A DNA stretch of 63,343 bases, filler included, from Neoconidiobolus thromboides FSU 785 (GCA_025603075.1; 11 parts of 11 records of this genome joined end to end with filler, not necessarily neighbours in it), one strand, 5' to 3'; counted from the whole stretch's first letter, positions 28,790 to 43,124 are shown. Notes: generated by a model not told the origin, from the sequence alone. Numbers and translations: made by a program.

Positions 28790-29491
28790 CACCCAGATGG
28801 AAAGCCAAGTTTTACTAGGTTTGAGCTAGTGAAGTTTAATGGTAAGTCTTCTTTAGTTAAAGCTATTCCAAAAACTGGTAGAACTCATCAAATTAGAGTA
28901 CATCTTTTTTATCTGGGATTTCCTATTGCTAATGATCCTTTGTATAAGTTAAATAAAGATAGTGAAAGCAATAACGATAAGGAAAAAGATAGAAAGGAGG
29001 ACATGGAAGTAAAATTGAATGGAATTGACAGTAAAGAGAAAGAAGCTGGAGATGATAAGGTAGAATTAATAGATAGTAAAATAAACAAAGTAATAGAAAA
29101 CAACATAAAGGAAAAGAAAAAGGAGAAAGAAGAAACAAATGAAGCTGGACAAGAAATACCAAAAATAAAAGATGAAAATAATGAAACTGAGTTAGACCAA
29201 AATAAAACTGACGAAGTTTTACCAAAGGTTAATAATACTAGTAATTTAAATCTAATAAAAATTCAATACATGAATGAGCATACAATAGAATTAGCAAAGA
29301 AGAGAATGCAACCAAGCAAAATAAACAGCGTAGGCTGGACACAATGTGATGTTTGTAATAATTTAATACCACCGGATCCTATTGTTAAAGAAAATTTGAT
29401 TTACTTACATGCTTATTCTTATAAATTATTGGACTATCATTTTACTACCAAGAACTTACCAGACTGGGCTAAAGAAGATTATGAAGATTAA
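28790..29491 (+). CDS. RluA-family pseudouridine synthase (Rib2/Pus9-like), 3' fragment
   Basis: [43 protein letters not shown]-rich insert, [13 protein letters not shown]. Confidence 0.9.
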
Positions 29492-29654
29492 TTAAAGAAA
29501 TCAAGCACATTATAGATAAAGATAGTTGTTTATTTCGGGAGTTAAATAAATAGATAAGAATTTCATAAGTTTTAATAAATAAAAAATGGTTTCAAGTAAT
29601 TTTTAATTAGTAGTAAATTGTAGCTCTATTTATTAACTTATTAAATAAAAATAG

Positions 29655-29702
29655 AATAAAATAAAACAAAATAAAATAAAATAAAATAAAATAAAATAAA
29701 AA
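29655..29702 (+). repeat. (AAAAT)n microsatellite
   Basis: gaataaaataaaacaaaataaaataaaataaaataaaataaaataaaa. Confidence 0.8.
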
Positions 29703-29838
29703 TTAATGTTTTTTTTGATAGCCTTATTTTTTATTTATTAAGTTTTAGTATCAATTATTGACTCAATTTTATTAATAAATATCTAATAATAACAAACCAT
29801 AAAAAAACAAATTTAGGCTTTGATTCAAAGAAACATTT

Positions 29839-29936
29839 GGGGGTGTTTTTTTGGCTTCATTGTTTTTTCCATCTTTTAAGCGCTATTTGAGTGGAAAAAT
29901 TGTTAGTGAGATCCTTAAATCCTCAAATACATCCCC
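29839..29936. mobile_element. MITE copy
   Basis: gggggtgttttttggcttcattg ... aaatacatcccc|attt. Confidence 0.85.
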
Positions 29937-29952
29937 ATTTGATAATAATAAT

Positions 29953-30047
29953 GGGAGTGTTTATTTTGACTTTACTTTTTCTGTTTTTTAAGCACTGTTT
30001 AAGTGGAAAATTTGTTAGTAAAATTCTTAAACACAAAAATACATCCC
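29953..30047. mobile_element. MITE copy, tandem with the previous one
   Basis: gggagtgtttattttgacttt ... aaaatacatccc. Confidence 0.8.
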
Positions 30048-30571
30048 AATACTTAATTAAAATCAATCAATTTGTTTATTTTAATAAACTAATTATTTCA
30101 AGTTTTTATTTCTGACATATTAGCAGTACTTTAAATCTATTTTATATATTAAGACTTATTTGAATTTTTCAAAATGCGAATTTAAATCTTTGCTTAATAT
30201 GGTACTATTACAAAGTATATTGTATACTATCCATGTTTTATAAACATTAAATAACTAAAATTAATAGTGTCTTCAAACTAAATACTGCTTGTTTATATTA
30301 TAGAATAATATCTTGATTCATTTAAATTAATATAGATAGAGCTTATATAACAACCAAGTATTATCATTAAAACAAACCTTTTATTTTAATAAAATCAGCT
30401 AGAGGTCTGATAAATAACATTAATATAATATAATAAACTAGTTATTTTGAATATTTATAAATATGGAAAAAACATAGGTAACTAAAATACTGTGAGTAAT
30501 TCAATGGTTTTAAACAACTACTTATTTAAAATAACTGTATAAATGATAAACTTTAGAGTCTTTTTTTATAT

Positions 30572-30662
30572 GGGGATGCATTTTTGTTTAAGATTTTACT
30601 AAGAGTTTTTCTACTCAAATAATGCTTAAAAGGTAGAAAAAGTGACAGTCAAAAAAATCCTC
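30572..30662. mobile_element. MITE copy
   Basis: atat|ggggatgcatttttgttaagattttactaa ... aaaatcctc|atat. Confidence 0.8.
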
Positions 30663-30988
30663 ATATTAATTCAAGTCAAAGCAAAGCCTTTATAGGTTTT
30701 TATTAGCACTAAAAGAGAAAATAAAGGACAAGTCTGAGATGACATGCATTGGAAAGTTAATAAATGTTTGATTATTCAAAATTTGATAGTACAAGGAAAC
30801 CAAATAAAGTAGTTAGAAATAAAAGCTTATAGCTTATAGCTTATGTATAAAAATTTCAAAGAGTATAACTACTTATACTATTCTAATATCTTGATAAATA
30901 CGCTGTAATACCATTTATTTTAAATAAGTTTTATTTGTTTATTCTTTATTAATTCATATTCGTTTTTAATTTAAATTATCAAACATAT

Positions 30989-31085
30989 GGGGATGTGTTT
31001 TTTTGCTTAAGAATTTTACTATATTCTTTCCACTTAAATAGCGCTTAAAAAATAGAAAAATAATGAAATTAAAAAAAACAGTCCC
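30989..31085. mobile_element. MITE copy
   Basis: atat|ggggatgtgttttttgcttaagaatttt ... aaacagtccc|atat. Confidence 0.85.
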
Positions 31086-31184
31086 ATATAATATTGTTTT
31101 AGCATTAAATATTTGTTTTATATCTAGTATTCAAAATATTTAAAAAAGCTATATAAGTAAAACAGAAAGGTTTCAATTATACAT

Positions 31185-32335
31185 AAAAATCAAACGTTTT
31201 TAGCTTTATCATTTCTACTTTTTGTTACTGCTACTTTAAGTCAAGATTCAATTGGGTTAATCTACTTAGATAAGAAATGTTATCACTTGGTTATGATTAA
31301 CTATAGTTTAAAGTTGACATATCACCAAAATATTAACGTAATTGTCAGTCTTTGCATTGTTGGCTAGTAATAGTAGGAAAGTATGAACAATCAGAGGAAT
31401 GGTACAAAGGAAAAAGCTGTTTTCATAATTTTAAATACTACTGTTTGACATGGCGTCAGTATTATACTAATGCTTTCCGAGTTAAGTTTACGAATTCAAT
31501 TGATCAAATAAAAGATTCAAATATATTGTATACTATAACTCCAAATAAAGAGAAAGGTTATATATATGTATAACTTCTAACATTCAAAGTAGGAATTATA
31601 TTTCTGTAGATTTGAGACAAAACTTAAGATTGACCGTTATCCCTATGAATAGTTATTATCCAGATGACCAAAAATATTGTCAAGTATTCTAAATCAAAAT
31701 GACCGAGGGTATTATTACTAAAATCCTAAATAAGATCAAGCTATATAAAAAGAATGCTCAAACAATCCAATTTAATGAGCATATGGGAATGTATTTTTTT
31801 GCTTGAAGATTTTACCAACAATTTTTCTACTCAAATAACGCTTAAAAATGGGAAAAGTAATAAAACCAAAAAAACATTCCCCCATATATTGATCATTGCT
31901 AAAATCTGTCCTTTAGCTAATGATGTATTACGAATTGTTACTATGGGATATAATTTTAGTGATTACTTTAAATTGATTCCAAGCTCGGAAACTAAATCAT
32001 CTTGTGGTACCTACTGTAGCACATTTGACATAGATAACAAAGCTGCTGATTTAGCTTCTTGTTTTACCTATTTACCACTAACCAATACTTCATAAATATC
32101 GTATAATAGTAAAGCTTCAGAATACATGGAAGTGGCTGTCACTGTTGGGCTTTCTGCTATTCCTTATACTGATTTGGTTTTAGTGGTTACTATTAATGCT
32201 ATTTTAGGTCCTACAACAGACCAAGAGGTTCTTAGGGAGTAAGTGTAAAGATACTGAGCTCGATAAAAAATTAATTATACCTGATAGAATTGCTAAACAA
32301 GTTTTAAACGAAGGTATTAAACTTTTGAAAGGATA
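31185..32335 (+). pseudogene. Decayed gene for a lineage-specific secreted protein (paralog A), interrupted by a MITE
   Basis: Signal-like FLALSFLLFVTATLS|QDSIGLIYLDKK, then SCFHNF and KICPLANDVL. Stops and frameshifts present. Colinear with 37955-39092. Confidence 0.6.
31785..31883. mobile_element. MITE copy inserted in paralog A
   Basis: gagc atat|gggaatgt ... acattccccc|atat attgatc. Confidence 0.88.
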
Positions 32336-32336
32336 T

Positions 32337-32432
32337 GGGGGTGTTTTTTTAGTTTCATTACTTTTTCTATTTTTAGTACTATTTAGGTGGAAAAACTTGC
32401 TAGTAAATTTTTAAACAAAAAAATAGATTCCC
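32337..32432. mobile_element. MITE copy
   Basis: atat|ggggtgttttttagtttcattac ... aatagattccc|atat. Confidence 0.82.
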
Positions 32433-33341
32433 ATATATTGAAGGATATTTTGATGGACTTATCAAATCAGTTAAAAATGCGTTATAGTTTTACATTGATT
32501 TAGATAAATACACATCTTTATACTTATCACATATTTTTATCAAAGATTTTATAACAAATTTAACTATTAGACTTTCTAAACTTTATTTTTGAAACATATA
32601 CGGAAGTTCATTGATCTTATCATAAGTAATAAAAATCCTAAACAATACTTTCCAAATGCCTTAACTTTAATTTCTATTATATATGTATTTTATAAGAGAT
32701 ATGTGGTAAATTCTGAATTTGAAAAGATTTATATCTCGCTCTCATTAATACCTTTTGATTGGTTTGGCCAATTTCCTTACAAAGCCCCGCTTATTATCAG
32801 ATCTATTTTAATTCCATCCGCTTACCTTATCATAATGGTTGTCACATCAAACGAATGTTAATCAATAAAACGCTCCCTCTGCCTGATCCTTTTTCCTAAC
32901 TTTTAAACTTAAATGTTGTGACTCCTTTGAAGCTCTCTCTGCTTTATACTCTATCACCAAGTGTTTTTTTCCTTGTTCTGCTTCTTCAATTTTAGTTTCA
33001 AAAGCCTATCACTATTTGACTTTTCTTTTGACCTTAATTAGCTCTACTTTTAGACTAATAAAAAAATAAAACACAATGTCTTCATTAAATTTCAGAAAAA
33101 AGACTTAGTCTGTTTTCAGTAATAGTGCCATTATTATAATAAAATGTATAAAAGTCAATCAAAAGAATAACTGGTATTTTTATTTGATTAGTTGCATCTA
33201 ATACTTTACCATGGTAATAATATTTTATTAATGGAAACGTAATTTTTTTGATGTTTAAAGCCTTGTTTGTGAAAAATTATTTCACTAAAATTTGATTGAA
33301 AAAATCATGACTTTTCTTTTCTCAATAAAATATCACCAAAA

Positions 33342-34413
33342 ATGGAGCTGCAACATAAAAACTTGTATCATTTAAAAAGTATAATAAACCATTGGAAAGA
33401 AGATATATCTGATACAACAATAAGAGAAGAAATCAAAACTTATTTGGATGAAGAAGAGTTTTATTTGGATGCTTTAAAAAATAAAAACCAGCTATATTTA
33501 GGTAAATCATTAGCATCAAACTACTACTGTTTGCTATATAATACTTAGCTTTATTTCCCTAGGTATCGATGGAAAGCAACGACAACAATTATTGGTAGAA
33601 GAAGAGTTACTATTACAAAGTAGAAAAGAGATTGAGAATAAATTTGGTATCAATTTAAAACCATTACCACTACCAACCATATATTCAACCCTTAAGCGCA
33701 TTGAACTTAATACGCATAAAGAGATCAAAGCATTATTGTCGAAAATCCGAAGAAGTAATCAAAAACAAGTAGCAAATAAAGGAAAGAAAGAGTTGTTGAA
33801 GCAAAGTTATCTCCTGGCTTATCAGTTATTGCACAAAGATAAAGAGAGAGAAGTATATTTCATATCTATTGATTTAGAAGTATGGGAGAGAAATCACGAT
33901 ACTATATTAGAGATTGGTTATTCTATTTTTAATTTCAAATCCCAGTTATTTTTATCAAAACACTTGATAATTAAGGAACATTATGGAATAAGAAACCAGT
34001 TACCAGGCTATGATAACAAAGAACATTTCCTATTTGGTAAAAGTCAACTGATGAGCTTAGTTGATGCTTTAAAATATTTTCAAAATGATATTAACCGATT
34101 TCGAAAGAATCTTTATTTAATAGGTCATGATTTTAATAATGATGTTAAATTCTTAAAGAAAAATGGAATCAGCTTGGAATACAATACTTTCGATACTACT
34201 GATTTATATAAACATTTAAATGATCAGTTGAACTCTGTTTCTCTATCGAATTTATTACATTATTTAAATATCGATGCGTTCTGTTTTCATAATGCTGGTA
34301 AAAAGATTACTATTATTTAAGTTATTGTTTTATTTTATTTTTACTTAGGTAATGACGCTCATTATACCTTACGAGCATTTTTAGCTTTATTGAAATATAA
34401 CCCTACTAATTAA
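33342..34413 (+). CDS. DEDDh 3'-5' exonuclease of the QIP/Gfd2-like group, 3 exons
   Basis: FISIDLEVWERNHDTILEIG, HLIIKEHYGIRN, EHFLFGKS, LIGHDFNNDVKFL, FDTTDLY, SLSNLL, FHNAG-[intron]-NDAHYTLRAFL. Confidence 0.85.
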
Positions 34414-35099
34414 AAGTTTTATTTTATATCAAATACAATATATGTACAATAATTCATAATTTATTTATAAAAACTTAATTGCAGTAAACTTCGGTTTGAT
34501 ACTCTTGCTAGTCAAAATATCAAAGGTAGATAGTATAAGGTGACATCTATGTACATAATTGTTAGTTGTTAGTTTTTCCACATATACTATTACCTATTCA
34601 ATTAAGAAATTATAATGCATTAATAGCAGCAGCGTCTTTTAATCCAACCTCTTTTTTTGTTTTAGTGCTTGTTTTAGTCGATAGTGAAAAAGACAAAGGA
34701 ATTAAACAGTGTTGTTATTCCACACTCCCGTCACGATGAGCGCGTATTCAAATTGAAAACTAGAAAGCTTCATTTTTTAAGAATTTAGTAATTGTCTCAG
34801 ATCGTTTTATACTATAGTATATATATTGATTCTATTTAAATAATCACAATACTTATAAGAAAGTACTAATTAAGAACAATAATTTGATTTCCCTCTTCCA
34901 AATAAAAAGATCAATAATCTGAAGATAATAGTACTAATAATTACTATGGGCTTCTACTATCATGATCTAATGTGAACGGTACTTTAAATTATTTATGATA
35001 CTTATCTAAACAATCGTAATTATCAACTTGATACTACAGCAAGACATTTGAACTTTACGACATAGAATAAGCTATTAGCTTATAATAATATTCATTGAA

Positions 35100-35760
35100 A
35101 TAAGAATTATGAACAAAAATGCAGATCATCGAGTTTTATCAACAATATCAGTAAAGGGAGGTATAAGAGTTAAAATATGTGTAATAAAAAAGGACACATT
35201 ATAACAAATAAAGGTTTATTCGAATCTGAATGGTTGGATGGGACTCAAAGGCAGGGTGATATAGAAATTGCAAAAAAGTTAAGCATAGGGAATTGAAAAG
35301 AGGATAATACAGAAATTTGAATGGAAACAACCCTAAAAGTGATAGTCAGTTATAGAAATTTAAACAGCCTTCAACAATATATGGTATTAATAATCAAGAA
35401 ATAATTGTAAATGAAGAAAACTATAAATTGTCCAAAGTAAAAGGAGATAAGGTTGCTTATTTAGCTAGTAATATGCTTGAAAGGATAGCAAATGGTATAA
35501 ATAAAAAAACCAGAGTTATAAAGTAATAATTAGAGTTGTTAATCGCGGTGGTAAATTATACTGAAAGAGGATCAAGTTTATTATTGACATAGCATTTAAA
35601 GTAGAAAAATAAAGGTAGCTCTAGTACTATGAATAAAGTTTGTTTTAATTTTATTAAAATTTTGGATACTATCAACCAAGATGATAGCTTGAAATAGATA
35701 TTTATAATAATACCAATGATTAGGTTGACTCAAACAGGTAGTAAATTAGACCCTATCAGA
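35100..35760 (+). pseudogene. Possible decayed LINE (endonuclease-RT) relic
   Basis: ADHRVLSTI (cf. SDH at the end of APE domains) and CFNFIKILDTIN (cf. DFxKAFDxV) among many stops; weak. Confidence 0.25.
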
Positions 35761-37326
35761 GGGGCAACTTAGGTTTTATGTTATGATTATGGAGCTTTAA
35801 ATTATTTGATTAGACAAAATCAAATTAACTATCTGACAAGATCTACTTTGCAACCTGCATGAATCAACTTAATTGCCTATATTGCTGTACAAAAAGCGAT
35901 CGAAGAATTTTTTAAAACCATAGCTCATCATATTGGAATACCAACGTATTCACATATATACTATTCATGATTTTTATTTAAAACAAGTGGAGCTTGTATA
36001 TGCACAATTAGCAATGCTTGAAAATGAGGGGAAAAAAAGCTAAATACATGAAAGATTTAAAGAAGTTTATGGCTGGAAAAAGCCATTGAAACTTCTGAAA
36101 AATATTTAATAAAACAATAGAGTATTTAATTATTTTCAAGGTTGAGACCTTGGAAATTGAGAGGAAGATTGAGATATAAACGGTTTGATTTTCAAATATT
36201 GTTTCATACCTTACAAAAGTGCTATTAATGATACCTAATATTAAAAGTTAAGTTTGAAATTCTATATATATCGATTTTTTTATTTACTTAATTTAGCAGA
36301 ATAAAAGTATCTTTAAACAGCTACTTTACTTTAAAACTTTATTTTATTTAATATTTCAAAAAACTCATCAAATTTTCAAACACAATATATATATACTTCT
36401 GCAATCTTATGAAAACTAAGAACATAGTTATGTTATTTTAACTCAACTATAAATTAGTAACATCAATTAAGCAATTAGTAATTAATAATCATATATAACA
36501 TTACAAAAAAGAAAGGACACAGATTATGACGCTTTATAGATGTGGCATTTTTCTTAAATTATGACTAAATCCCGTAGTTTTTATTCAGCATTATAATAAA
36601 AAAAAAGGAAGTCTAATCTATAACAGAATATACTGTTATTTTGAGGAGTCCTTATACTTAAAAAGGACAGTGAATGTGATGGATAAAGTGCGAAAGCTGT
36701 AGAAGTTAAACATGGACAAATTTTATGGAAAATTATTAGTATATGAGCATGTCAATTTAAAGCAGCGATTCTAGAACTACTCACTTATAGTGATATCCTT
36801 TATTTCAAACAACTTGTTTTAAGACATCTTTAACAATTCTATTTATGAATTCGTAATTGAAGTTTTATTTCGTGTAAATATAATGTTTCCAAGCCTTATT
36901 TTTCAAATTAAATTTGATTTGGTTTTTTAAATTTATCGTATGTAGCCTTTAGCCAATACATTGCTTTGAAAAACATATTGCATGTAAATTACATTTTTAT
37001 AAATTTTGATTAGATAAATGAATGAATAATGTACTACAAATTAAATAATATATGTCTATATTAGGCATTTGGACTTTATAAATCAGTTTTATATAAATAG
37101 CAGCTATATAATAAATAAGCATTATTTTATGATATATCGCATGTTTTAATAATACTTACCTAACGGAAATATAATAAGTGGTGTTACTTTAACATGATAA
37201 GTACAATAAGTGGGGCATTACCAAGTAATGGCAAATGAGTGCCAATTAGAGCTGAAGTGATGAGTAATTTAACATCAAGTCAAATAATCGATTAGTTTAA
37301 AAAAATTAAAAAGATGAGAAATATAT

Positions 37327-37423
37327 GGGGATGTATTTTATTATTTGAGAGTTTTACTAACAATCTTTCCACTTAAACAACGCTTAAAAAATGGAAAAAC
37401 AATGGAATAAAGAAAACATCACC
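37327..37423. mobile_element. MITE copy
   Basis: atat|ggggatgtattttattatttgagagttttactaac ... aaaacatcacc|atat. Confidence 0.82.
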
Positions 37424-37954
37424 ATATCCAACCTTGAAACAAACATGACAAAAGCTCAGGTTAATGTAAAAATTAAAAACTATTTACATAATCTTGCCAC
37501 TATTTAATTTAAAAGTCGAAACTAAAGTTTAGTTTAATTATTCAAAAGCTTAAATTTCAAAAGACTATATCAAAATAGCACTAGTCTGTTGTGAAATATG
37601 TGCTCAATATCAATTTTGTTTATTTTTTATCTATTATATCATTATTCAAAATGAAATACAAAATATAAAGTGTTACTTTCAATTTCATTACTCACTTTAA
37701 TAGAAATGACAACCTTATTAGATTAGATATAGTTTTTAGATACTCTAGTTACTTCTATTGGTATCCTTATGTTCATATATAAACGTTAGAACTTGAAAAG
37801 AATTCGATCTATTGTTTCTCCTTTGCTGTTTCATATTGATTGTTAGCTTAAATCATTAAGTGTGAGTTGTTTATTATAATAAAACTTTAGCTTTGTATCC
37901 AGTATCTAAAGTATCAGAAGAGACTATCTATACAAAGATAAAAAAGTAATATTT

Positions 37955-39092
37955 AAAAAAATTTAATGTTTTGCTTTATTGCTTATATTTTTTTACTACT
38001 ACTACTTTAGGCTGGGACCCTCTTGGGTTGATTCACTTGGATAAGAAATATTATAGAGTTAAAGATGGCTTAGTATGATTTGAAGTTGACATAACATCAA
38101 AATATCAATGTAATTGCCATCCTTTACATCTTTGGTTAAAAATAATAGGAAAGGATAGAAAATTAGAGGGGCGGTACTATCGAAAGAGCTGCTTTCATGA
38201 CTCTGGATTATGTTGTGCAACATACTATCAATATTGCGCCGATAACTTTCGTATAAAGACTATAGATTCAATCTATAAAATAGGAAATTTGGATATCATG
38301 GAGCTAGCTCACTTCTATGAATAAAGATAGAAGAATGTTTATATGCGACTTCCAACTTTAAAAGTTTGAACTATATTTCTGTGGATTTAAGACAGGGTCT
38401 AAGATCTGTTATTGTCCCTGTAGATAATTTCCATCTAGATAACCAAAATTATCATCAAATATTTCAAATTAAAACGGAGAATATAGTCAATAAAATTTTA
38501 AACAATACTAATTTATATAATACGCAGCTTCAAACAATTCAATTCAACAACAAAATGCTAGATACTAGTAAATTTGTCTTTTGGCTAATGATGTGTTACA
38601 AACCGCTGCCATGGAGTATGACTTTATCAAATATTAAGTTAACTCCAAAATTAGAAACTAAGCCTTCTTGCGGGTTTTAAGGGTTTGATTATGATAACAA
38701 TCGTAGTTGTTTTTATAGTCTAAGCAAAGATTGTAATCGAGGAGCTATTTTAGCTAAATATCTTACCAACTTATTTTTGACTAACACCTCCAAAATGATT
38801 TATAGTAACAAAGTTTTAGATTATATGAGAAATCCCATAACTTTTTGCCTTGAAGCTCCTATATTCTGGTCTAGTTTTAACTGCTACCGCTAATGTCATT
38901 TTAGGCCTTATGGGAGATGAACTGCCTTTTAATGAACATAAAGGAAAGGAGTTTAACAAAAGGTTAGTCACCTTTAGTGACTCTCGTAGAAATTTTTTAA
39001 AAGAAAGTCAGAATATTGTAAAAAGCCATATCAAAGATCGTTATGGTGATATGAACTCTACCAAAAAATTGTATGGCTCAACCTTGTCTTAA
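37955..39092 (+). pseudogene. Decayed gene for a lineage-specific secreted protein (paralog B)
   Basis: FALLLIFFTTTTLG|WDPLGLIHLDKK, CNCHPLHLWL, SCFHDSGLCC, YISVDLRQ. Stops and frameshifts present. Colinear with 31185-32335. Confidence 0.6.
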
Positions 39093-39579
39093 ATAACAAA
39101 ATTCAGTCTATTGTGTACTCTTAATAATTTTTATTATGAATTTGAGATTAGAAGCTATAAACTATATTCTTGTTTAACCCTATGCGCTTTTGCTTATCAC
39201 AGATATTTTAAGGATTACTGTAAGCTAACAGAAAAAAATTAATAAACTAACAGGAAGTCAAATAATCTAGGTTTGTATTTATAATAATAGCTTCATCACT
39301 TCTCCTTTTCTATTTATAATAATTTTTCAAGCTTCCTTTATAACATAAATCAGCTTGCAATATAGTTTATATACAATTGTAATGCTTGTGTTTAATACGA
39401 CATAATGCAGACATAAGGATATTATAGAAAGCTAAGATAGTTAAAAATTCTAGGGTTGAAACTATATGAATTAAAAAATAAGAGCATTAAACAAATATAC
39501 AGAAAATCAAAAAATAACAAAATTAAGACACAAAATAAGATAAAGCAATAACTATTATTTATTAAGTAATTAGGACTAC

Positions 39580-39822
39580 TTAATTGTAATAGCAGCAGCA
39601 AGATTGCCAGCCCCAACCACAACATTCACCTTTCTTATATTTACCAGATGGACCTGAGCATTGTTTGCAACGGTCGTTACATAGGTCGCCTCCTCCTGGT
39701 CCTTTGCATGAGCCAGCAGCACCACATGCTTGAATCTCAGTAGCCAATTTACCATCTGGAGTAGCAGCAATAACAGTAGAAAGAGAAGCAATAGCAAATA
39801 ACAAAGCAGATTGAAATTTCAT
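39580..39822 (-). CDS. Secreted 10-Cys defensin-like (CSalphabeta-type) peptide, copy 1
   Basis: 80 aa: hydrophobic signal MKFQSALLFAIASLSTVIA, then Cys pattern C-x5-C-x8-C-x3-C-x2-C-x11-CC-x6-CCC containing CxxxC, GxC and CxC. Confidence 0.85.
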   Translation of the reverse strand: MKFQSALLFAIASLSTVIAATPDGKLATEIQACGAAGSCKGPGGGDLCNDRCKQCSGPSGKYKKGECCGWGWQSCCCYYN

Positions 39823-39950
39823 TTTTGAGATTAATGTTTTTTATAATTCAATGGGCTTGATTTTTTCCTTTATATACTTTACTGTTGCAAAGATCCTCTT
39901 ACTATAATAAATGTAATAAAGACATTATTTAACTAGATATTATATTGGCT

Positions 39951-39997
39951 TATTTCATTAACTATTGACTTATTTCATTAACTATTGACTATTTATT
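39951..39997 (+). repeat. 20-bp tandem repeat (~2.3 copies) upstream of defensin copy 1
   Basis: tatttcattaactattgact tatttcattaactattgact attt. Confidence 0.7.
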
Positions 39998-41525
39998 AAC
40001 AAAGAGCTTTTACCCTTTTTTAGAGATTATTGAAAGGTAGAATTTGCGAAATTTTAACTAATTTACTTCTATTCTTATCCCTAAATTAGCAAATATCAAT
40101 CTCACTTGAATTTGATGATAAAATTTTTTTAAGGCACACGTCACCCAACATTGACATTTAAGTTTGTAATTTAAATTTCCATACTACTGATTCCATTTAT
40201 ATGTGAATTAATATTTCCGATTTCATATTTGTTAACTATAAAAATAGAAAAAGTCATAATGGTTAAATTCCACAGATATAAAATTTCAAATTGCTTAACC
40301 CACATTTGAATTGAATCAGTTAGCAATAAATTCATTTCAAAATACAGCGAATACGAGTATATTTTAATCATTTGGGCCTATCAATAAATTTTTATTATTT
40401 AATATTTTAAAAAAAAACATAGTATTTAGCAAAAAAAACATTAATTTTGAATCTTAAGCTTATATTCGATTTATATTATATTATAAGTTAATAGGAAATA
40501 TTGAATTAAGGCATTTAGTATTAACTTTTATTATCACATACAAGAAACTCATCAAAGTGCGCACATTGATTCTTTATTTAATTATTAGTTTAATACTTTG
40601 TTGTAATTTAGCTACTTATTTTATGATGTGGGGGAACAGGCTAAATAGATCAACATTTAAAACACAGCATACAAATCTGATTAAAAAGTAGGGGATTTTA
40701 ATTTGTACTGGGTCCAATTCAAAACATAGATATAGTGTTCACAAATCAAAATACTTAGCCAAAGCACAGTCATTAACTTTACATGTATTTTTTTTAAAAT
40801 GTAGCTATACTTATTTGTATTTATTAATAAATTCAAAATAAAAATTTCATTATTTTAAAACAAGCTTATTTATTAATCACCTGTAATTTAAGAATTAACT
40901 AATCTAGCACTATGCATCGCATTTTTAATTTTAGGTTGAATTTAGCTTCTTATACCATTTTAGGAATTATGTTTTGACGTTTTATTCTTAAAATTATCTA
41001 TTAAGAAAATTCTGTAGTCACAATTCTAATATATCAAATAAAAGTGAGCTCTATAAAAAGTATAGGAATGGTATACTTTGTAGACTTATAAAGGAATTTT
41101 ATTGAGCTATTCATAGTATTATCCATAGTCAAGTTATGAAATATTGCGCTTATACCTTCTTTTTTCAAAACCTACATAATAAATTAATTATCATTAATGA
41201 TGTTTGTTTTGATCACAAATACAGGTAATATAATGGCAAACAAGTACAATATCTTATATTACCGCCGTTATTTAACATCTTAGGTAATGTCAATCTTTTA
41301 AGAAATTGATTATTTGCTAAATATAACAAATCTCTAAATAAGCTCAAAGACATTACAGTTATTTAAAATAAGTGCACAGCCTAATTATCATAATATCAAA
41401 TGGTAACAATTATAGTGGAAATAATAATAAACATTAAAATATCAGATCATAATCAATAGGATATCGAAAATTCAAGTATAAAAACCCCAACAAAAAGACC
41501 ATTAACTCAAAATAAAAATCCCAAT

Positions 41526-41768
41526 ATGAAATTTCAATCTGCTTTGTTATTTGCTATTGCTTCTCTTTCTACTGTTATTGCTGCTACTCCAGATGGTAAA
41601 TTGGCTACTGAGATTCAAGCATGTGGTGCTGCTGGCTCATGCAAAGGACCAGGAGGAGGCGACCTATGTAACGACCGTTGCAAACAATGCTCAGGTCCAT
41701 CTGGTAAATATAAGAAAGGTGAATGTTGTGGTTGGGGCTGGCAATCTTGCTGCTGCTATTACAATTAA
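41526..41768 (+). CDS. Secreted 10-Cys defensin-like peptide, copy 2 (nucleotide-identical ORF to copy 1)
   Basis: Same 243-nt ORF in the opposite orientation; upstream TATA-like agtataaaaa. Confidence 0.85.
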   Translation: MKFQSALLFAIASLSTVIAATPDGKLATEIQACGAAGSCKGPGGGDLCNDRCKQCSGPSGKYKKGECCGWGWQSCCCYYN

Positions 41769-41917
41769 GTAGTTTAATTGGTTCGATCAATAGCGCTTTA
41801 TTAAAATTCACGGATGATGAGTGTTATTAGTTCAAATACTATATACTATTGCTAAAATAAACAATGGTGAATTTTAAATTACATCAATTTTACTTTGTTT
41901 TTTCAATTTACAATATT

Positions 41918-42015
41918 GGGGATGTGTTTTTGTGTTTAAGAATTTTGCTAACAGTTTTTTCACTCAAATAGCGCTTAAAAAATGGAAAAAGTAGTGAAGT
42001 CAAAAAAACATCCCC
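41918..42015. mobile_element. MITE copy
   Basis: ggggatgtgtttttgtgtttaagaattttgctaac ... aaaaacatcccc|atat. Confidence 0.88.
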
Positions 42016-42424
42016 ATATGAATTAGAATTAGTTTAAAATCCAGTCGAATTTTAGTCAATTTAGATTTTTAGCAAAAATTGTGAATTAAGCACTTTTATA
42101 ATATAATTTTTTTTACTTACTTAATTTTAAAATAACTTATATTTTGACGTTTTGTCTGGTTTCAATAGTTTTTTAAGATTTGATGCTAAATAAGAAATAG
42201 GTAAAAAATAAAATTAAATAAAGTTTTTTGAACCAAGTTTCAAACTTATATTTATATTTATATTTATAAAAGTTATTTTTTAAGTTTAATATTAGGCTAA
42301 TGAATGATATGAATGATATAACTATAGTAAATACCTAAACTTTACTAATTCCAAAACAGACTGTAATTAGCTATAGCATTTATATTAGATTAAATCATTT
42401 TATTATTAATTTTATATATTATAT

Positions 42425-42623
42425 GAGGATGTATTTTTGTGTTTAAGAATTTCACTACAATTTTTCTACTTAAATAGCACTTAAAAGATGGAAAAAGCAA
42501 TGAAGTCAAAAATATATCGTCATATAGTACTATTTTTTTCGGCTTCATTGCTTTTCCCATCTTTTAAGTGCTATTTAAGTAGAAAAATTGTAGTGAAATT
42601 CTTAAACACAAAAATACATCCCC
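42425..42623. mobile_element. Two abutting MITE copies in inverted orientation (42425-42521; ~42530-42623)
   Basis: atat|gaggatgtatttttgtgtttaagaattt... followed by ttttttttcggcttcattgc ... aaaatacatcccc. Confidence 0.82.
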
Positions 42624-42861
42624 ATTGTGAAATTTGGTACTTAGTGTTTGGAGTCAAGAATAGCTATTGCTCGGTTGACTACACTATAAGTCGAAAGGCC
42701 TTAGTTTATGTGACTAAGATAGACTTGAATTACGAAGAATGCCACGTAATAGGTTACAAGCTATATAGGACAAATAGAATAGACAATACTAATGTAAAAT
42801 CTATGTAAAATACTATTAAGAAAACTCAATGACTTTATTAAATGTTCGAGATATCAGGGAT

Positions 42862-43124
42862 TAATTCAGTTAAAAAGCCTCGAACTATTATACTCTGTAA
42901 ACTCTTTTATACTCTGAAAAGTATAAATATCAAAATGAGAAGATAATGTTCTTTGAGATGGAGCTAGAAATTCTCATAGCAAATCAAACTAAGAGCGTGG
43001 GATTTGCTATGAGAATTTCTAGCTCCATCTCAAAGAACATTATCTTCTCATTTTGATATTTATACTTTTCAGAGTATAAAAGAGTTTACAGAGTATAATA
43101 GTTCGAGGCTTTTTAACTGAATTA
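42862..43124. repeat. Perfect 124-bp inverted repeat with 15-nt loop at a contig end (repeat family C)
   Basis: Arms 42862-42985 and 43001-43124, loop aaactaagagcgtgg; ends at a gap. Confidence 0.9.

What the first reader, a model, noticed from the sequence alone, without database searches (positions are those of the whole stretch)
39580..41768. Twin divergent genes for a 10-cysteine defensin-like peptide: ORFs 100% identical, flanks diverged
Seen: two 243-nt ORFs 1.7 kb apart in back-to-back orientation. By eye they are identical at every base from ATG to 5 nt past the stop, while the UTRs keep only traces of homology (cattaa-ctcaaaa). The peptide has a signal sequence, a short pro-segment and a 48-aa cationic domain (net about +3) with Cys at 33, 39, 48, 52, 55, 67, 68, 75, 76 and 77. 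Established: CxxxC / GxC / CxC is the CSalphabeta defensin signature, which usually has 3-4 disulfides. Inference: a possibly new five-disulfide antimicrobial or insect-toxic peptide with adjacent CC and CCC clusters, dosage-doubled and homogenised by gene conversion between inverted copies.
Basis: partly seen in the sequence, partly recalled or inferred. Interest (0 to 1): 0.78.

Follow-up and report, generated by a model that had tools for sequence, protein, structure and literature searches.

The report
Twin identical fungal defensin genes
The insect-associated fungus Neoconidiobolus thromboides carries two head-to-head, base-identical genes for a secreted ten-cysteine peptide predicted to fold like the fungal antibiotics plectasin and copsin, and closely related isolates carry a second, non-identical form of the gene, which points to recent copying of one twin over the other.

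Summary
Observation confirmed. ORFs 39580-39822(-) and 41526-41768(+) are identical over exactly 248 nt, from the A of ATG to 5 nt past the stop. They sit head-to-head across a 1703-nt spacer, and their flanks cannot be aligned. The piece is contig MU626606.1 of Neoconidiobolus thromboides FSU 785.

In the probable source run the shared unitig has twice the flank depth and joins all four junctions, so both copies are real. Three related runs, with flanks about 99.5% identical, also hold a second ORF type whose listed differences are mostly synonymous. That favours recent gene conversion in the FSU 785 lineage.

The peptide belongs to an uncharacterised family: three more diverged paralogs in this genome, several Ascomycota, one basidiomycete and bdelloid rotifers. 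Pfam gives no hit. The AlphaFold model (pLDDT 80) has a helix carrying CxxxC and a hairpin carrying GxC and CxC. Three structure searches rank plectasin, copsin, eurocin and arthropod or plant defensins first.

Verdict: a new four-to-five-disulfide subfamily of CSalphabeta (cysteine-stabilised alpha-beta) defensins. It is probably antibacterial. Activity, target and disulfide map are untested. Moderately interesting, not categorically new.

The parts
39580..39822 (-). Copy A coding sequence, 80 aa, intronless; signal peptide about residues 1-20, short linker 21-31, Cys-rich domain 32-80
   Evidence: annotated as an 80-aa gene in GCA_025603075.1
41526..41768 (+). Copy B coding sequence, identical 80 aa. 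The public annotation gives a 107-aa model with an added upstream exon. That model is probably wrong, because the extension runs through the TATA-like box.
39575..39822 (-). Arm A of the exact 248-nt inverted repeat (ATG to stop+5)
   Evidence: X1 unitig with twice the flank depth
41526..41773 (+). Arm B of the exact 248-nt inverted repeat
39823..41525 (.). 1703-nt AT-rich spacer (GC 0.24) holding the two divergent upstream regions. It has no ORF of 70 aa or more, no tRNA, no Rfam match and no internal symmetry.
39869..39877 (-). TATA-like box of copy A (GTATATAAA, -55 to -47)
   Evidence: The motif count in the window is not above chance, but all five paralogs in this genome carry the motif at about -45 to -75.
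41476..41484 (+). TATA-like box of copy B (GTATAAAAA, -50 to -42)
41619..41765 (+). Copy B, codons 32-80: the predicted CSalphabeta domain. The model gives helix 44-53 and strands 64-68 and 74-78.
39583..39729 (-). Copy A, codons 32-80: the same domain

Best explanation
These are two functional, divergently transcribed genes of Neoconidiobolus thromboides. Each encodes the same secreted pre-peptide: a signal peptide, an 11-residue linker and a 49-residue cationic domain. The domain is predicted to fold as a cysteine-stabilised alpha-beta (cis-)defensin. Helix 44-53 carries C48xxxC52 and would be pinned to strand 74-78 (C75xC77). Inferred connectivity is C48-C75, C52-C77, C39-C67 (the canonical three), C33-C55 (the family's fourth) and C68-C76 (the fifth, specific to the 10-Cys clade). 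By analogy with every characterised fungal relative of this fold (plectasin, eurocin, micasin, copsin), the most likely role is an exported antibacterial peptide that sequesters the cell-wall precursor lipid II and helps the mycelium compete with bacteria on cadavers or litter. I put about 0.45 on that specific target and about 0.85 on the fold. The twins are old paralogs whose flanks have diverged beyond alignment. Their coding sequence is kept alike by intrachromosomal gene conversion between the inverted arms. In FSU 785 the latest conversion covered the whole ORF, and the tract ends where homology ends. Shown: identity, two-copy depth, family membership, purifying selection, predicted fold. 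Inferred: disulfide map, target, conversion mechanism, dosage benefit.
For: Identity and copy number.

Purifying selection on the other paralogs: dN/dS is 0.09-0.19 and dS 0.9-2.0, against dS = 0 for A versus B. GC3 of 0.25 equals that of host genes.

Fold: the AF2 model has pLDDT 79.9, with the helix and hairpin holding the framework cysteines.
- Foldseek: 36 of 38 hits are CSalphabeta peptides. Plectasin is top, TM by target 0.70-0.72, rmsd 2.0-2.1.
- VIA-align over 48,161 chains: plectasin Z 4.6, copsin Z 4.2 (48 residues aligned), eurocin 4.2, drosomycin 4.0.
- ESM Atlas: the top four clusters are Defensin_2, Gamma-thionin or plant defensin.
- The PDB profile search returns only CSalphabeta defensins, with cysteines in register.

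Other support: homologue P0041 is named by UniProt as 'Invertebrate defensins family profile domain-containing protein'. The Purpureocillium homologue has a phase-0 intron in the helix and a phase-2 intron in the c-loop. That is the organisation described for micasin-type fungal defensins (PMC4165938). All characterised fungal CSalphabeta defensins target lipid II (PMC6272156).

Conversion: runs X2, X4 and X7 hold a second ORF type. In X4 it shows 11 differences over 188 nt plus three further differences near the 3' end. Of the 10 ORF differences listed there, 8 are synonymous. X4's flanks differ from the window at only about 0.5% of positions, and X1 has no trace of the second type.

In X2 and X4 the contig from copy A's unique 3' flank runs without a break 66-72 nt into the arm. 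So no second identical copy with another flank exists in those runs.

Expression: in X7, guessed to be RNA, the ORF contig has depth 896 (bin sum 9252) against 2.5 in the upstream region.
Against: No Pfam defensin model matches any of 21 family members; the best is Gamma-thionin at E 2.2 in one member. PDB sequence similarity is weak, E 0.8-6.7, and hhalign against a copsin fragment gives only 17% probability. Structure-search scores are modest in absolute terms (Z below 5, Foldseek E above 0.5), as is usual for 50-residue peptides. The C68/C76 co-occurrence reduces to a single gain on the family tree. There is no dibasic processing site, so the mature N-terminus is unknown. One paralog (L003) has net charge -2. 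The read evidence comes from contigs, not raw reads. The second ORF type could not be phased to copy B's flank, and X1 is probably the assembly's own sample. That X7 is RNA is a guess.
Confidence: 0.66

Rival explanations
1. Same fold, different target. The peptide is an animal-directed toxin, for example a K+ or Na+ channel blocker or an insect toxin used during aphid or insect infection, like scorpion CSalphabeta toxins or the toxin-like zygomycete defensin licosin.
For: N. thromboides belongs to an insect-associated group (established knowledge). Scorpion alpha-toxins and K+ channel toxins appear lower in the fold hit lists. A paper in the library describes a zygomycete defensin with K+ channel blocking activity (PMC13199095, abstract seen).
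Against: The best structural and sequence matches are the antibacterial fungal defensins, not toxins. The family also occurs in a root-associated ascomycete, a saprotrophic mushroom, a mycoparasite and rotifers, which argues for a general rather than an insect-specific target.
Confidence: 0.13
2. Same fold, antifungal role. The peptide acts on fungal membranes or sphingolipids like drosomycin, heliomicin or plant defensins, and is used against competing fungi.
For: Drosomycin (Z 4.0), plant defensins (Z 3.9-4.0) and ARD1 or heliomicin are within 1 Z unit of plectasin. Four or more disulfides are typical of antifungal members. Clonostachys, a mycoparasite, carries homologues.
Against: The N-terminal segment and the C-terminal CxC-Y region align best with plectasin and copsin. 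A secreted antifungal would need self-protection, and nothing nearby suggests any.
Confidence: 0.13
3. The perfect identity does not come from gene conversion. Either the assembly collapsed or polished two copies into one sequence, or the second ORF type seen in the other isolates is a third paralog or an allele, and A and B are simply a very young inverted duplicate of the bare ORF.
For: In X4 the depths (35 for the reference type, 27 for the variant, flanks 22-26) do not cleanly separate a 1+1 from a 2+1 copy arrangement. The variant was not phased to copy B's flank, and copy B's 3' flank (41774-41968) is not covered in X2 or X4.
Against: In X1 the arm has 1.9 times the flank depth and no bubble, and all four arm-flank junctions are present. 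A's and B's flanks are as unalignable as those of paralogs with dS of about 1 or more, so the duplication itself is old. In X2 and X4 the contig from A's 3' flank passes the arm boundary without branching. A duplication of exactly ATG to stop+5 with no flank would be an odd coincidence.
Confidence: 0.08

Closest known systems
Plectasin (Pseudoplectania nigrella) and eurocin: fungal ancient-invertebrate-type CSalphabeta defensins that bind lipid II
   Same: Best structural match: Z 4.6, rmsd 1.9 over 38 of 40 residues, and TM by target 0.70-0.72. Both are secreted fungal peptides with CxxxC in the helix and a G-x-C...C-x-C-Y C-terminus. About 32-35% identity in the structural alignment.
   Different: Plectasin has 3 disulfides in 40 residues. 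This peptide has 10 Cys, an N-terminal extension with C33, an extra C55 after the helix (CxxxCxxC), a longer helix-to-strand loop (SGPSGKYKK) and the CC/CCC pair. No Pfam or significant sequence match. Lipid II binding is untested.
Copsin (Coprinopsis cinerea), a six-disulfide fungal defensin, PDB 2MN5
   Same: Aligns over almost the whole domain: 48 residues, Z 4.2, and profile positions 5-50. It shares the CxxxCxxC motif and the C-x7-C-x-C hairpin, is a multi-disulfide secreted fungal peptide, and targets lipid II (PMC6272156).
   Different: Copsin's extra cysteines (in the loop and the C-terminal tail) sit at other positions. It has no adjacent CC/CCC. Sequence similarity is only E about 1.3, and hhalign probability is 17%.
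Micasin-type fungal defensin-like peptides (fDEF families; Wu, Gao and Zhu 2014, PMC4165938)
   Same: The Purpureocillium homologue has the same two-intron layout: phase 0 in the helix and phase 2 in the c-loop. The precursor plan is also shared: a signal peptide followed by a short or absent pro-region.
   Different: None of the fDEF1-8 descriptions read here mentions Conidiobolus or this motif. Those papers' alignments are in figures and could not be compared. The N. thromboides genes are intronless.
Petunia PhD1, a five-disulfide plant defensin (PDB 1N4N)
   Same: A precedent for a fifth disulfide on the CSalphabeta scaffold. It appears as Foldseek hit 35.
   Different: A plant family with a different position for the extra bond. 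The structural match is weak (E 9.1).
Concerted evolution of inverted duplicate genes (for example Drosophila hsp70 pairs; from general knowledge)
   Same: A head-to-head pair whose coding sequence is homogenised while the flanks diverge.
   Different: Here the exact tract is only 248 nt and coincides with the ORF. The mechanism is inferred from contigs of related isolates, not demonstrated.

Membership tests
cis-defensin / CSalphabeta superfamily | Cysteine framework C...CxxxC...GxC...CxC | tested here: met
   C39...C48NDRC52...G65EC67...C75C76C77 read from the translation. Of these positions, C39, C48, C52, G65 and C67 are invariant across all 21 homologues. C75 and C77 are present in all 16 complete sequences.
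cis-defensin / CSalphabeta superfamily | An alpha-helix carrying CxxxC, packed on an antiparallel hairpin carrying GxC and CxC | tested here: met
   AF2 model with pLDDT 79.9: helix 44-53, strands 64-68 and 74-78. Top hits in three independent structure searches are defensins. This is a prediction, not an experiment.
cis-defensin / CSalphabeta superfamily | Disulfides C2-C5, C3-C6 and C1-C4 | not testable with these tools
Connectivity is inferred from the alignment to plectasin and copsin.
cis-defensin / CSalphabeta superfamily | Secreted precursor with an N-terminal signal peptide | tested here: met
   By inspection only, with no predictor available. MK is followed by about 17 mostly hydrophobic or small residues ending in VIAA. 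The same plan is seen in the family precursors with a complete N-terminus.
Pfam defensin families (Defensin_2 PF01097, Gamma-thionin PF00304 and others) | HMM match at or above the gathering score | tested here: not met
   0 families for the window peptide at E<=10. Among 21 homologues there is a single Gamma-thionin hit at E 2.2.
PROSITE invertebrate-defensin profile | Profile match | not testable with these tools
   Only indirect evidence: UniRef A0A0B7KNK6 (P0041, Clonostachys, an 8-Cys homologue) carries the automatic name 'Invertebrate defensins family profile domain-containing protein'.
Lipid II-binding fungal defensins (plectasin, eurocin, micasin, copsin) | Binding of lipid II and activity on Gram-positive bacteria | not testable with these tools
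   Function is inferred from fold neighbours and from PMC6272156.
Lipid II-binding fungal defensins (plectasin, eurocin, micasin, copsin) | Detectable sequence homology | tested here: inconclusive
   PDB profile hits are actinomycesin (E 0.81), BmKDfsin3 (1.2), copsin (1.3) and defensin-1 (6.7), all with cysteines in register. hhalign against copsin gives 17% probability. The intron positions in the ascomycete homologue match the micasin type.
Gene pair under concerted evolution (gene conversion) | An identical tract bounded by unalignable flanks, while other paralogs are saturated at synonymous sites | tested here: met
   248 nt exact; flank similarity all E>0.1; dS 0.9-2.0 to the other paralogs.
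Gene pair under concerted evolution (gene conversion) | The same locus in close relatives carries non-identical copies | tested here: inconclusive
   X2, X4 and X7 hold a second ORF type while their flanks are about 99.5% identical, and contigs from A's flank do not branch at the arm boundary. The variant could not be phased to copy B's flank, and only contigs were available.

The most novel reading that the evidence does not exclude
This is a distinct, undescribed defensin lineage (framework C-x5-C-x8-C-x3-C-x2-C-x11-C[C/G]-x6-C-x-C) that has moved between distant eukaryotes. The N. thromboides domain is as similar to those of Purpureocillium and Monosporascus (81%) as to its own paralogs (77-81%). 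It nests inside a Dikarya clade, and a sister clade sits in bdelloid rotifer genomes. On this reading the gene entered Neoconidiobolus and the rotifers by old horizontal transfer. The 10-Cys clade gained a cross-strand fifth disulfide that may confer unusual stability or a new target.
Probability: 0.3. Interest if true: 0.55.

Novelty: new variant of a known kind. Interest (0 to 1): 0.42.

Why it matters
Fungal CSalphabeta defensins such as plectasin and copsin are among the few eukaryotic peptide antibiotics with a defined target (lipid II) and some drug-development history. This would be an uncharacterised, hyper-crosslinked subfamily from an early-diverging fungal phylum, and it offers new scaffolds to test. 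The locus is also a compact natural example of gene conversion caught between isolates: identical twins in one strain and a second, non-identical ORF type in its relatives. In addition, four of the five family genes in the public annotation are mis-modelled, so the family is under-counted in databases.

Tried and rejected
- Pfam scans of the peptide and of 21 homologues found no usable hit.
- ESM Atlas search by sequence features scored below 0.8 and was uninformative.
- The first AlphaFold run, with a 6-sequence alignment, gave pLDDT 59.6 and was not used for fold search.
- A PDB profile search with the 6-sequence alignment gave 0 hits.
- hhalign against the copsin fragment printed gave 17% probability: inconclusive.
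- The bacterial promoter/terminator scan is irrelevant for a eukaryote.
- tRNA and Rfam scans of the piece found nothing.
- The copsin paper (PMC4263892) is not held, so copsin's disulfide map could not be compared.
- Literature searches for Conidiobolus with defensin, and for the family motif in the two fDLP papers, found no description of this peptide.
- Recent horizontal transfer was considered and rejected, because GC3 (0.25) matches host genes and the paralogs are saturated at synonymous sites.
- A palindromic assembly artefact was considered and rejected. The arms are only 248 nt with a 1.7-kb asymmetric spacer and distinct flanks, and read depth supports two copies.

Full report
**1. 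What is there**

The piece (window 28790-43124) is the whole 14,335-bp contig MU626606.1 of assembly GCA_025603075.1, Neoconidiobolus thromboides FSU 785 (Entomophthoromycotina). It is about 25% GC.

ORF A (39580-39822, minus strand) and ORF B (41526-41768, plus strand) encode the same 80-aa protein. A direct comparison gives one exact run of 248 nt, from the A of ATG to five bases past TAA. The 251-nt arms reported by the repeat finder include one mismatch at position -1.

The genes are head-to-head, and a 1703-nt spacer separates the two ATGs. Outside the arms, blastn with 7-nt words finds nothing significant between A's and B's flanks. Only a short cattaa(t)ctcaaaa trace and a GTATA(T/A)AAA box about 50 nt upstream remain. 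The box is shared by all five paralogs in this genome.

**2. Are both copies real?**

Logan contigs of four runs were laid on 38800-42600. Run X1 carries organism label A at about 450x and is probably the assembly's own sample.
- The unitig 39575-39822 has depth 853.
- The left flank has depth 452, the spacer contig 461 and the right flank 420.
- Each of these three contigs overlaps the arm by exactly 30 nt, and no alternative letters occur in the ORF.

This is the de Bruijn-graph signature of two identical inverted copies with four distinct junctions. It is not a collapsed or invented copy.

**3. The family in this genome**

The word search found three more N. thromboides proteins. Reading their loci shows that the true genes are intronless ORFs of 78-80 aa with the same ten cysteines.
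- L001:5238-5480 and L001:7009-7251 form a tandem direct pair on MU626418.1.
- L003:6950-7186 lies on MU626667.1.

The public models for these three, and the 107-aa model for copy B, add false exons or introns.

These paralogs are 75-76% identical to A/B at the DNA level, with 20-26 synonymous-only codons. Nei-Gojobori estimates give dS 0.9-2.0 and dN/dS 0.09-0.19. They are therefore old genes under strong purifying selection. GC3 (0.25) equals that of neighbouring host genes. Against this background, dS = 0 between A and B with unalignable flanks needs a special explanation.

**4. Gene conversion**

Runs X2, X4 and X7 carry other organism labels, but their flanks match the window at about 99.5%. 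In X4 the listed pieces show 13 differences in roughly 2.9 kb.

All three runs contain a second ORF type.
- X4: a bubble over 41526-41713, with one branch identical to the window (depth 35) and one with 11 differences (depth 27). Three further changes lie near the 3' end.
- X7: the ORF contig carries a largely overlapping set of changes.
- X2: only two changes are seen (codons G69 and G71).

In X4, eight of the ten listed ORF differences are synonymous; the exceptions are T16I and K53R. Both X2 differences are synonymous, as are seven of the eight listed in X7 (D46E is the exception).

In X2 and X4 the contig that starts in A's unique 3' flank runs 66-72 nt into the arm without the break seen in X1. 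So no second copy with an identical 3' end exists in those runs. X1 shows no trace of the second type.

The simplest reading is as follows. The ancestral pair was about 6% diverged, already far closer than other paralogs, which implies earlier rounds of conversion. In the FSU 785 lineage one twin then overwrote the other across the entire ORF. The tract ends where homology ends.

Limits:
- Only contigs were available, and depths in X4 are ambiguous between a 1+1 and a 2+1 arrangement.
- The variant could not be phased to B's flank.
- B's 3' flank (41774-41968) is not covered in X2 or X4, so that segment differs between isolates.

**5. Expression**

X7 is guessed by the tool to be RNA. There the ORF contig has depth 896 (bin sum 9252). 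The region upstream of B has depth 2.5, and most of the spacer has none. This fits a highly expressed transcript, but the library type is not on record.

**6. What the peptide is**

Pfam finds nothing. A profile of the mature domain was searched against 1.84 billion representatives and found 21 clusters at E<=1e-3. Their source names place them as follows:
- Ascomycota: Monosporascus, Purpureocillium, Clonostachys, Amphichorda and Thelonectria.
- Basidiomycota: Collybia nuda.
- Animals: the bdelloid rotifers Adineta and Rotaria.
- Metagenomes.

Many representatives are cut at introns. One Clonostachys member is auto-named by UniProt 'Invertebrate defensins family profile domain-containing protein'.

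The family has eight core cysteines: 33, 39, 48, 52, 55, 67, 75 and 77. Five of them (39, 48, 52, 67 and, in the complete sequences, 75 and 77) never vary in the 21-sequence alignment. C33 is not aligned in the rotifer sequences and C55 is replaced in one metagenome sequence. C68 and C76 are present together (7 sequences) or absent together (9 sequences) among the 16 complete sequences. This points to a C68-C76 bond. On the tree, however, the 10-Cys sequences form one clade, so this counts as a single gain.

**7. Fold**

With the 21-sequence alignment, AlphaFold2 gives pLDDT 79.9 and pTM 0.60. Helix 44-53 contains C48xxxC52. Strands 64-68 (G65-E-C67-C68) and 74-78 (C75-C76-C77) form a hairpin. 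This is the CSalphabeta layout.
- Foldseek against the PDB returns 38 hits, of which 36 are CSalphabeta peptides. Plectasin variants lead (TM by target 0.70-0.72, rmsd 2.0-2.1), followed by MGD-1 and copsin.
- VIA-align against 48,161 representatives, which does not depend on Foldseek, ranks plectasin (Z 4.6), copsin (Z 4.2, 48 residues), eurocin (4.2), drosomycin (4.0) and plant defensins first.
- The ESM Atlas shape search puts Defensin_2, Gamma-thionin and plant-defensin clusters in rows 1-4.
- A sequence profile against all PDB chains returns only four hits, all CSalphabeta defensins with cysteines in register, at E 0.8-6.7.

The absolute scores are modest, as expected for 50 residues. The agreement of four independent lists is the argument.

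In addition, the Purpureocillium gene has a phase-0 intron within the helix (CNDR|C) and a phase-2 intron in the c-loop (WQ|R). This is the organisation described for micasin-type fungal defensins (PMC4165938).

**8. Mechanism**

All characterised fungal defensins of this fold (plectasin, eurocin, micasin, copsin) bind lipid II and kill mainly Gram-positive bacteria (PMC6272156). By analogy the most likely role is a secreted antibacterial, with two gene copies raising output. This is inference. Antifungal or channel-toxin roles on the same scaffold remain possible and are listed as rivals. No dibasic processing site precedes the domain, so the mature N-terminus is unknown.

**9. Novelty**

The fold and the phenomenon (concerted evolution of an inverted pair) are known. 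Multi-disulfide CSalphabeta peptides also have precedents: copsin with six bonds and PhD1 with five.

What appears new is this sequence subfamily, with its fourth (C33-C55) and fifth (C68-C76) bonds and its patchy distribution. It matched no Pfam model and no solved structure. I found no description of it in the papers searched.

I rate it a new variant of a known kind, of moderate interest.

Noticed in passing
window 41917-42019, 42423-42625, 29834-30050, 30565-31081, 31781-31877, 32333-32374, 37323-37419: A roughly 100-nt MITE-like element (a short repeated mobile-element relic) with terminal inverted repeats (TGGGGATGT...ACATCCCCA) occurs at least 10 times in this 14-kb contig. Summed contig depth over it in run X1 is about 1.2 million against about 450 for single-copy DNA, which suggests thousands of copies in the genome.
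   Followed up: partly
window 42862-43124 (contig end): A perfect 124-nt palindrome with a 15-nt loop lies exactly at the end of the contig. It looks like an assembly or hairpin artefact rather than biology.
   Followed up: no
L001:5121-5480, L001:7009-7358, L003:6950-7240; window 41400-41768: Four of the five family genes are mis-modelled in the public annotation, with false upstream exons or false 3' introns (KAI9292882.1, KAI9292881.1, KAI9290803.1, KAI9291060.1). The plain intronless ORFs of 78-80 aa restore all ten cysteines.
   Followed up: yes
L006:8001-8277, L007:4448-4724 (Rotaria magnacalcarata); P0016, P0025: Bdelloid rotifers carry 8-Cys homologues, 49-60% identical in the domain. 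The Rotaria magnacalcarata gene contains an intron and sits in 46-52 kb contigs of two assemblies, next to genes with kinase, WWE and APH domains. This may be horizontal acquisition from fungi, or an old animal defensin lineage.
   Followed up: partly
L004:8001-8397 (Purpureocillium lavendulum): The ascomycete homologue is named 'retrovirus polyprotein' in GenBank and UniProt. This is evidently a naming error for a 90-aa, two-intron defensin-like gene.
   Followed up: yes
alignment A3; tree: The N. thromboides domain is as similar to the Purpureocillium and Monosporascus homologues (81%) as to its own paralogs (77-81%), and it nests within Dikarya sequences. That is unusual conservation across phyla for a defensin, or else an old cross-phylum transfer. 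Codon usage is fully host-like.
   Followed up: partly
window 41774-41968: The 3' flank of copy B is covered in X1 but has no or very little cover in the related runs X2 and X4, although the sequence from about 41969-41985 onward is covered again. This segment seems specific to the isolate.
   Followed up: no
window 31560-31958 and 38335-38626: Two dispersed segments are 70-75% identical and overlap ORFs 31754-32095 and 38366-38680. This is another repeated element or gene fragment of unknown nature.
   Followed up: no
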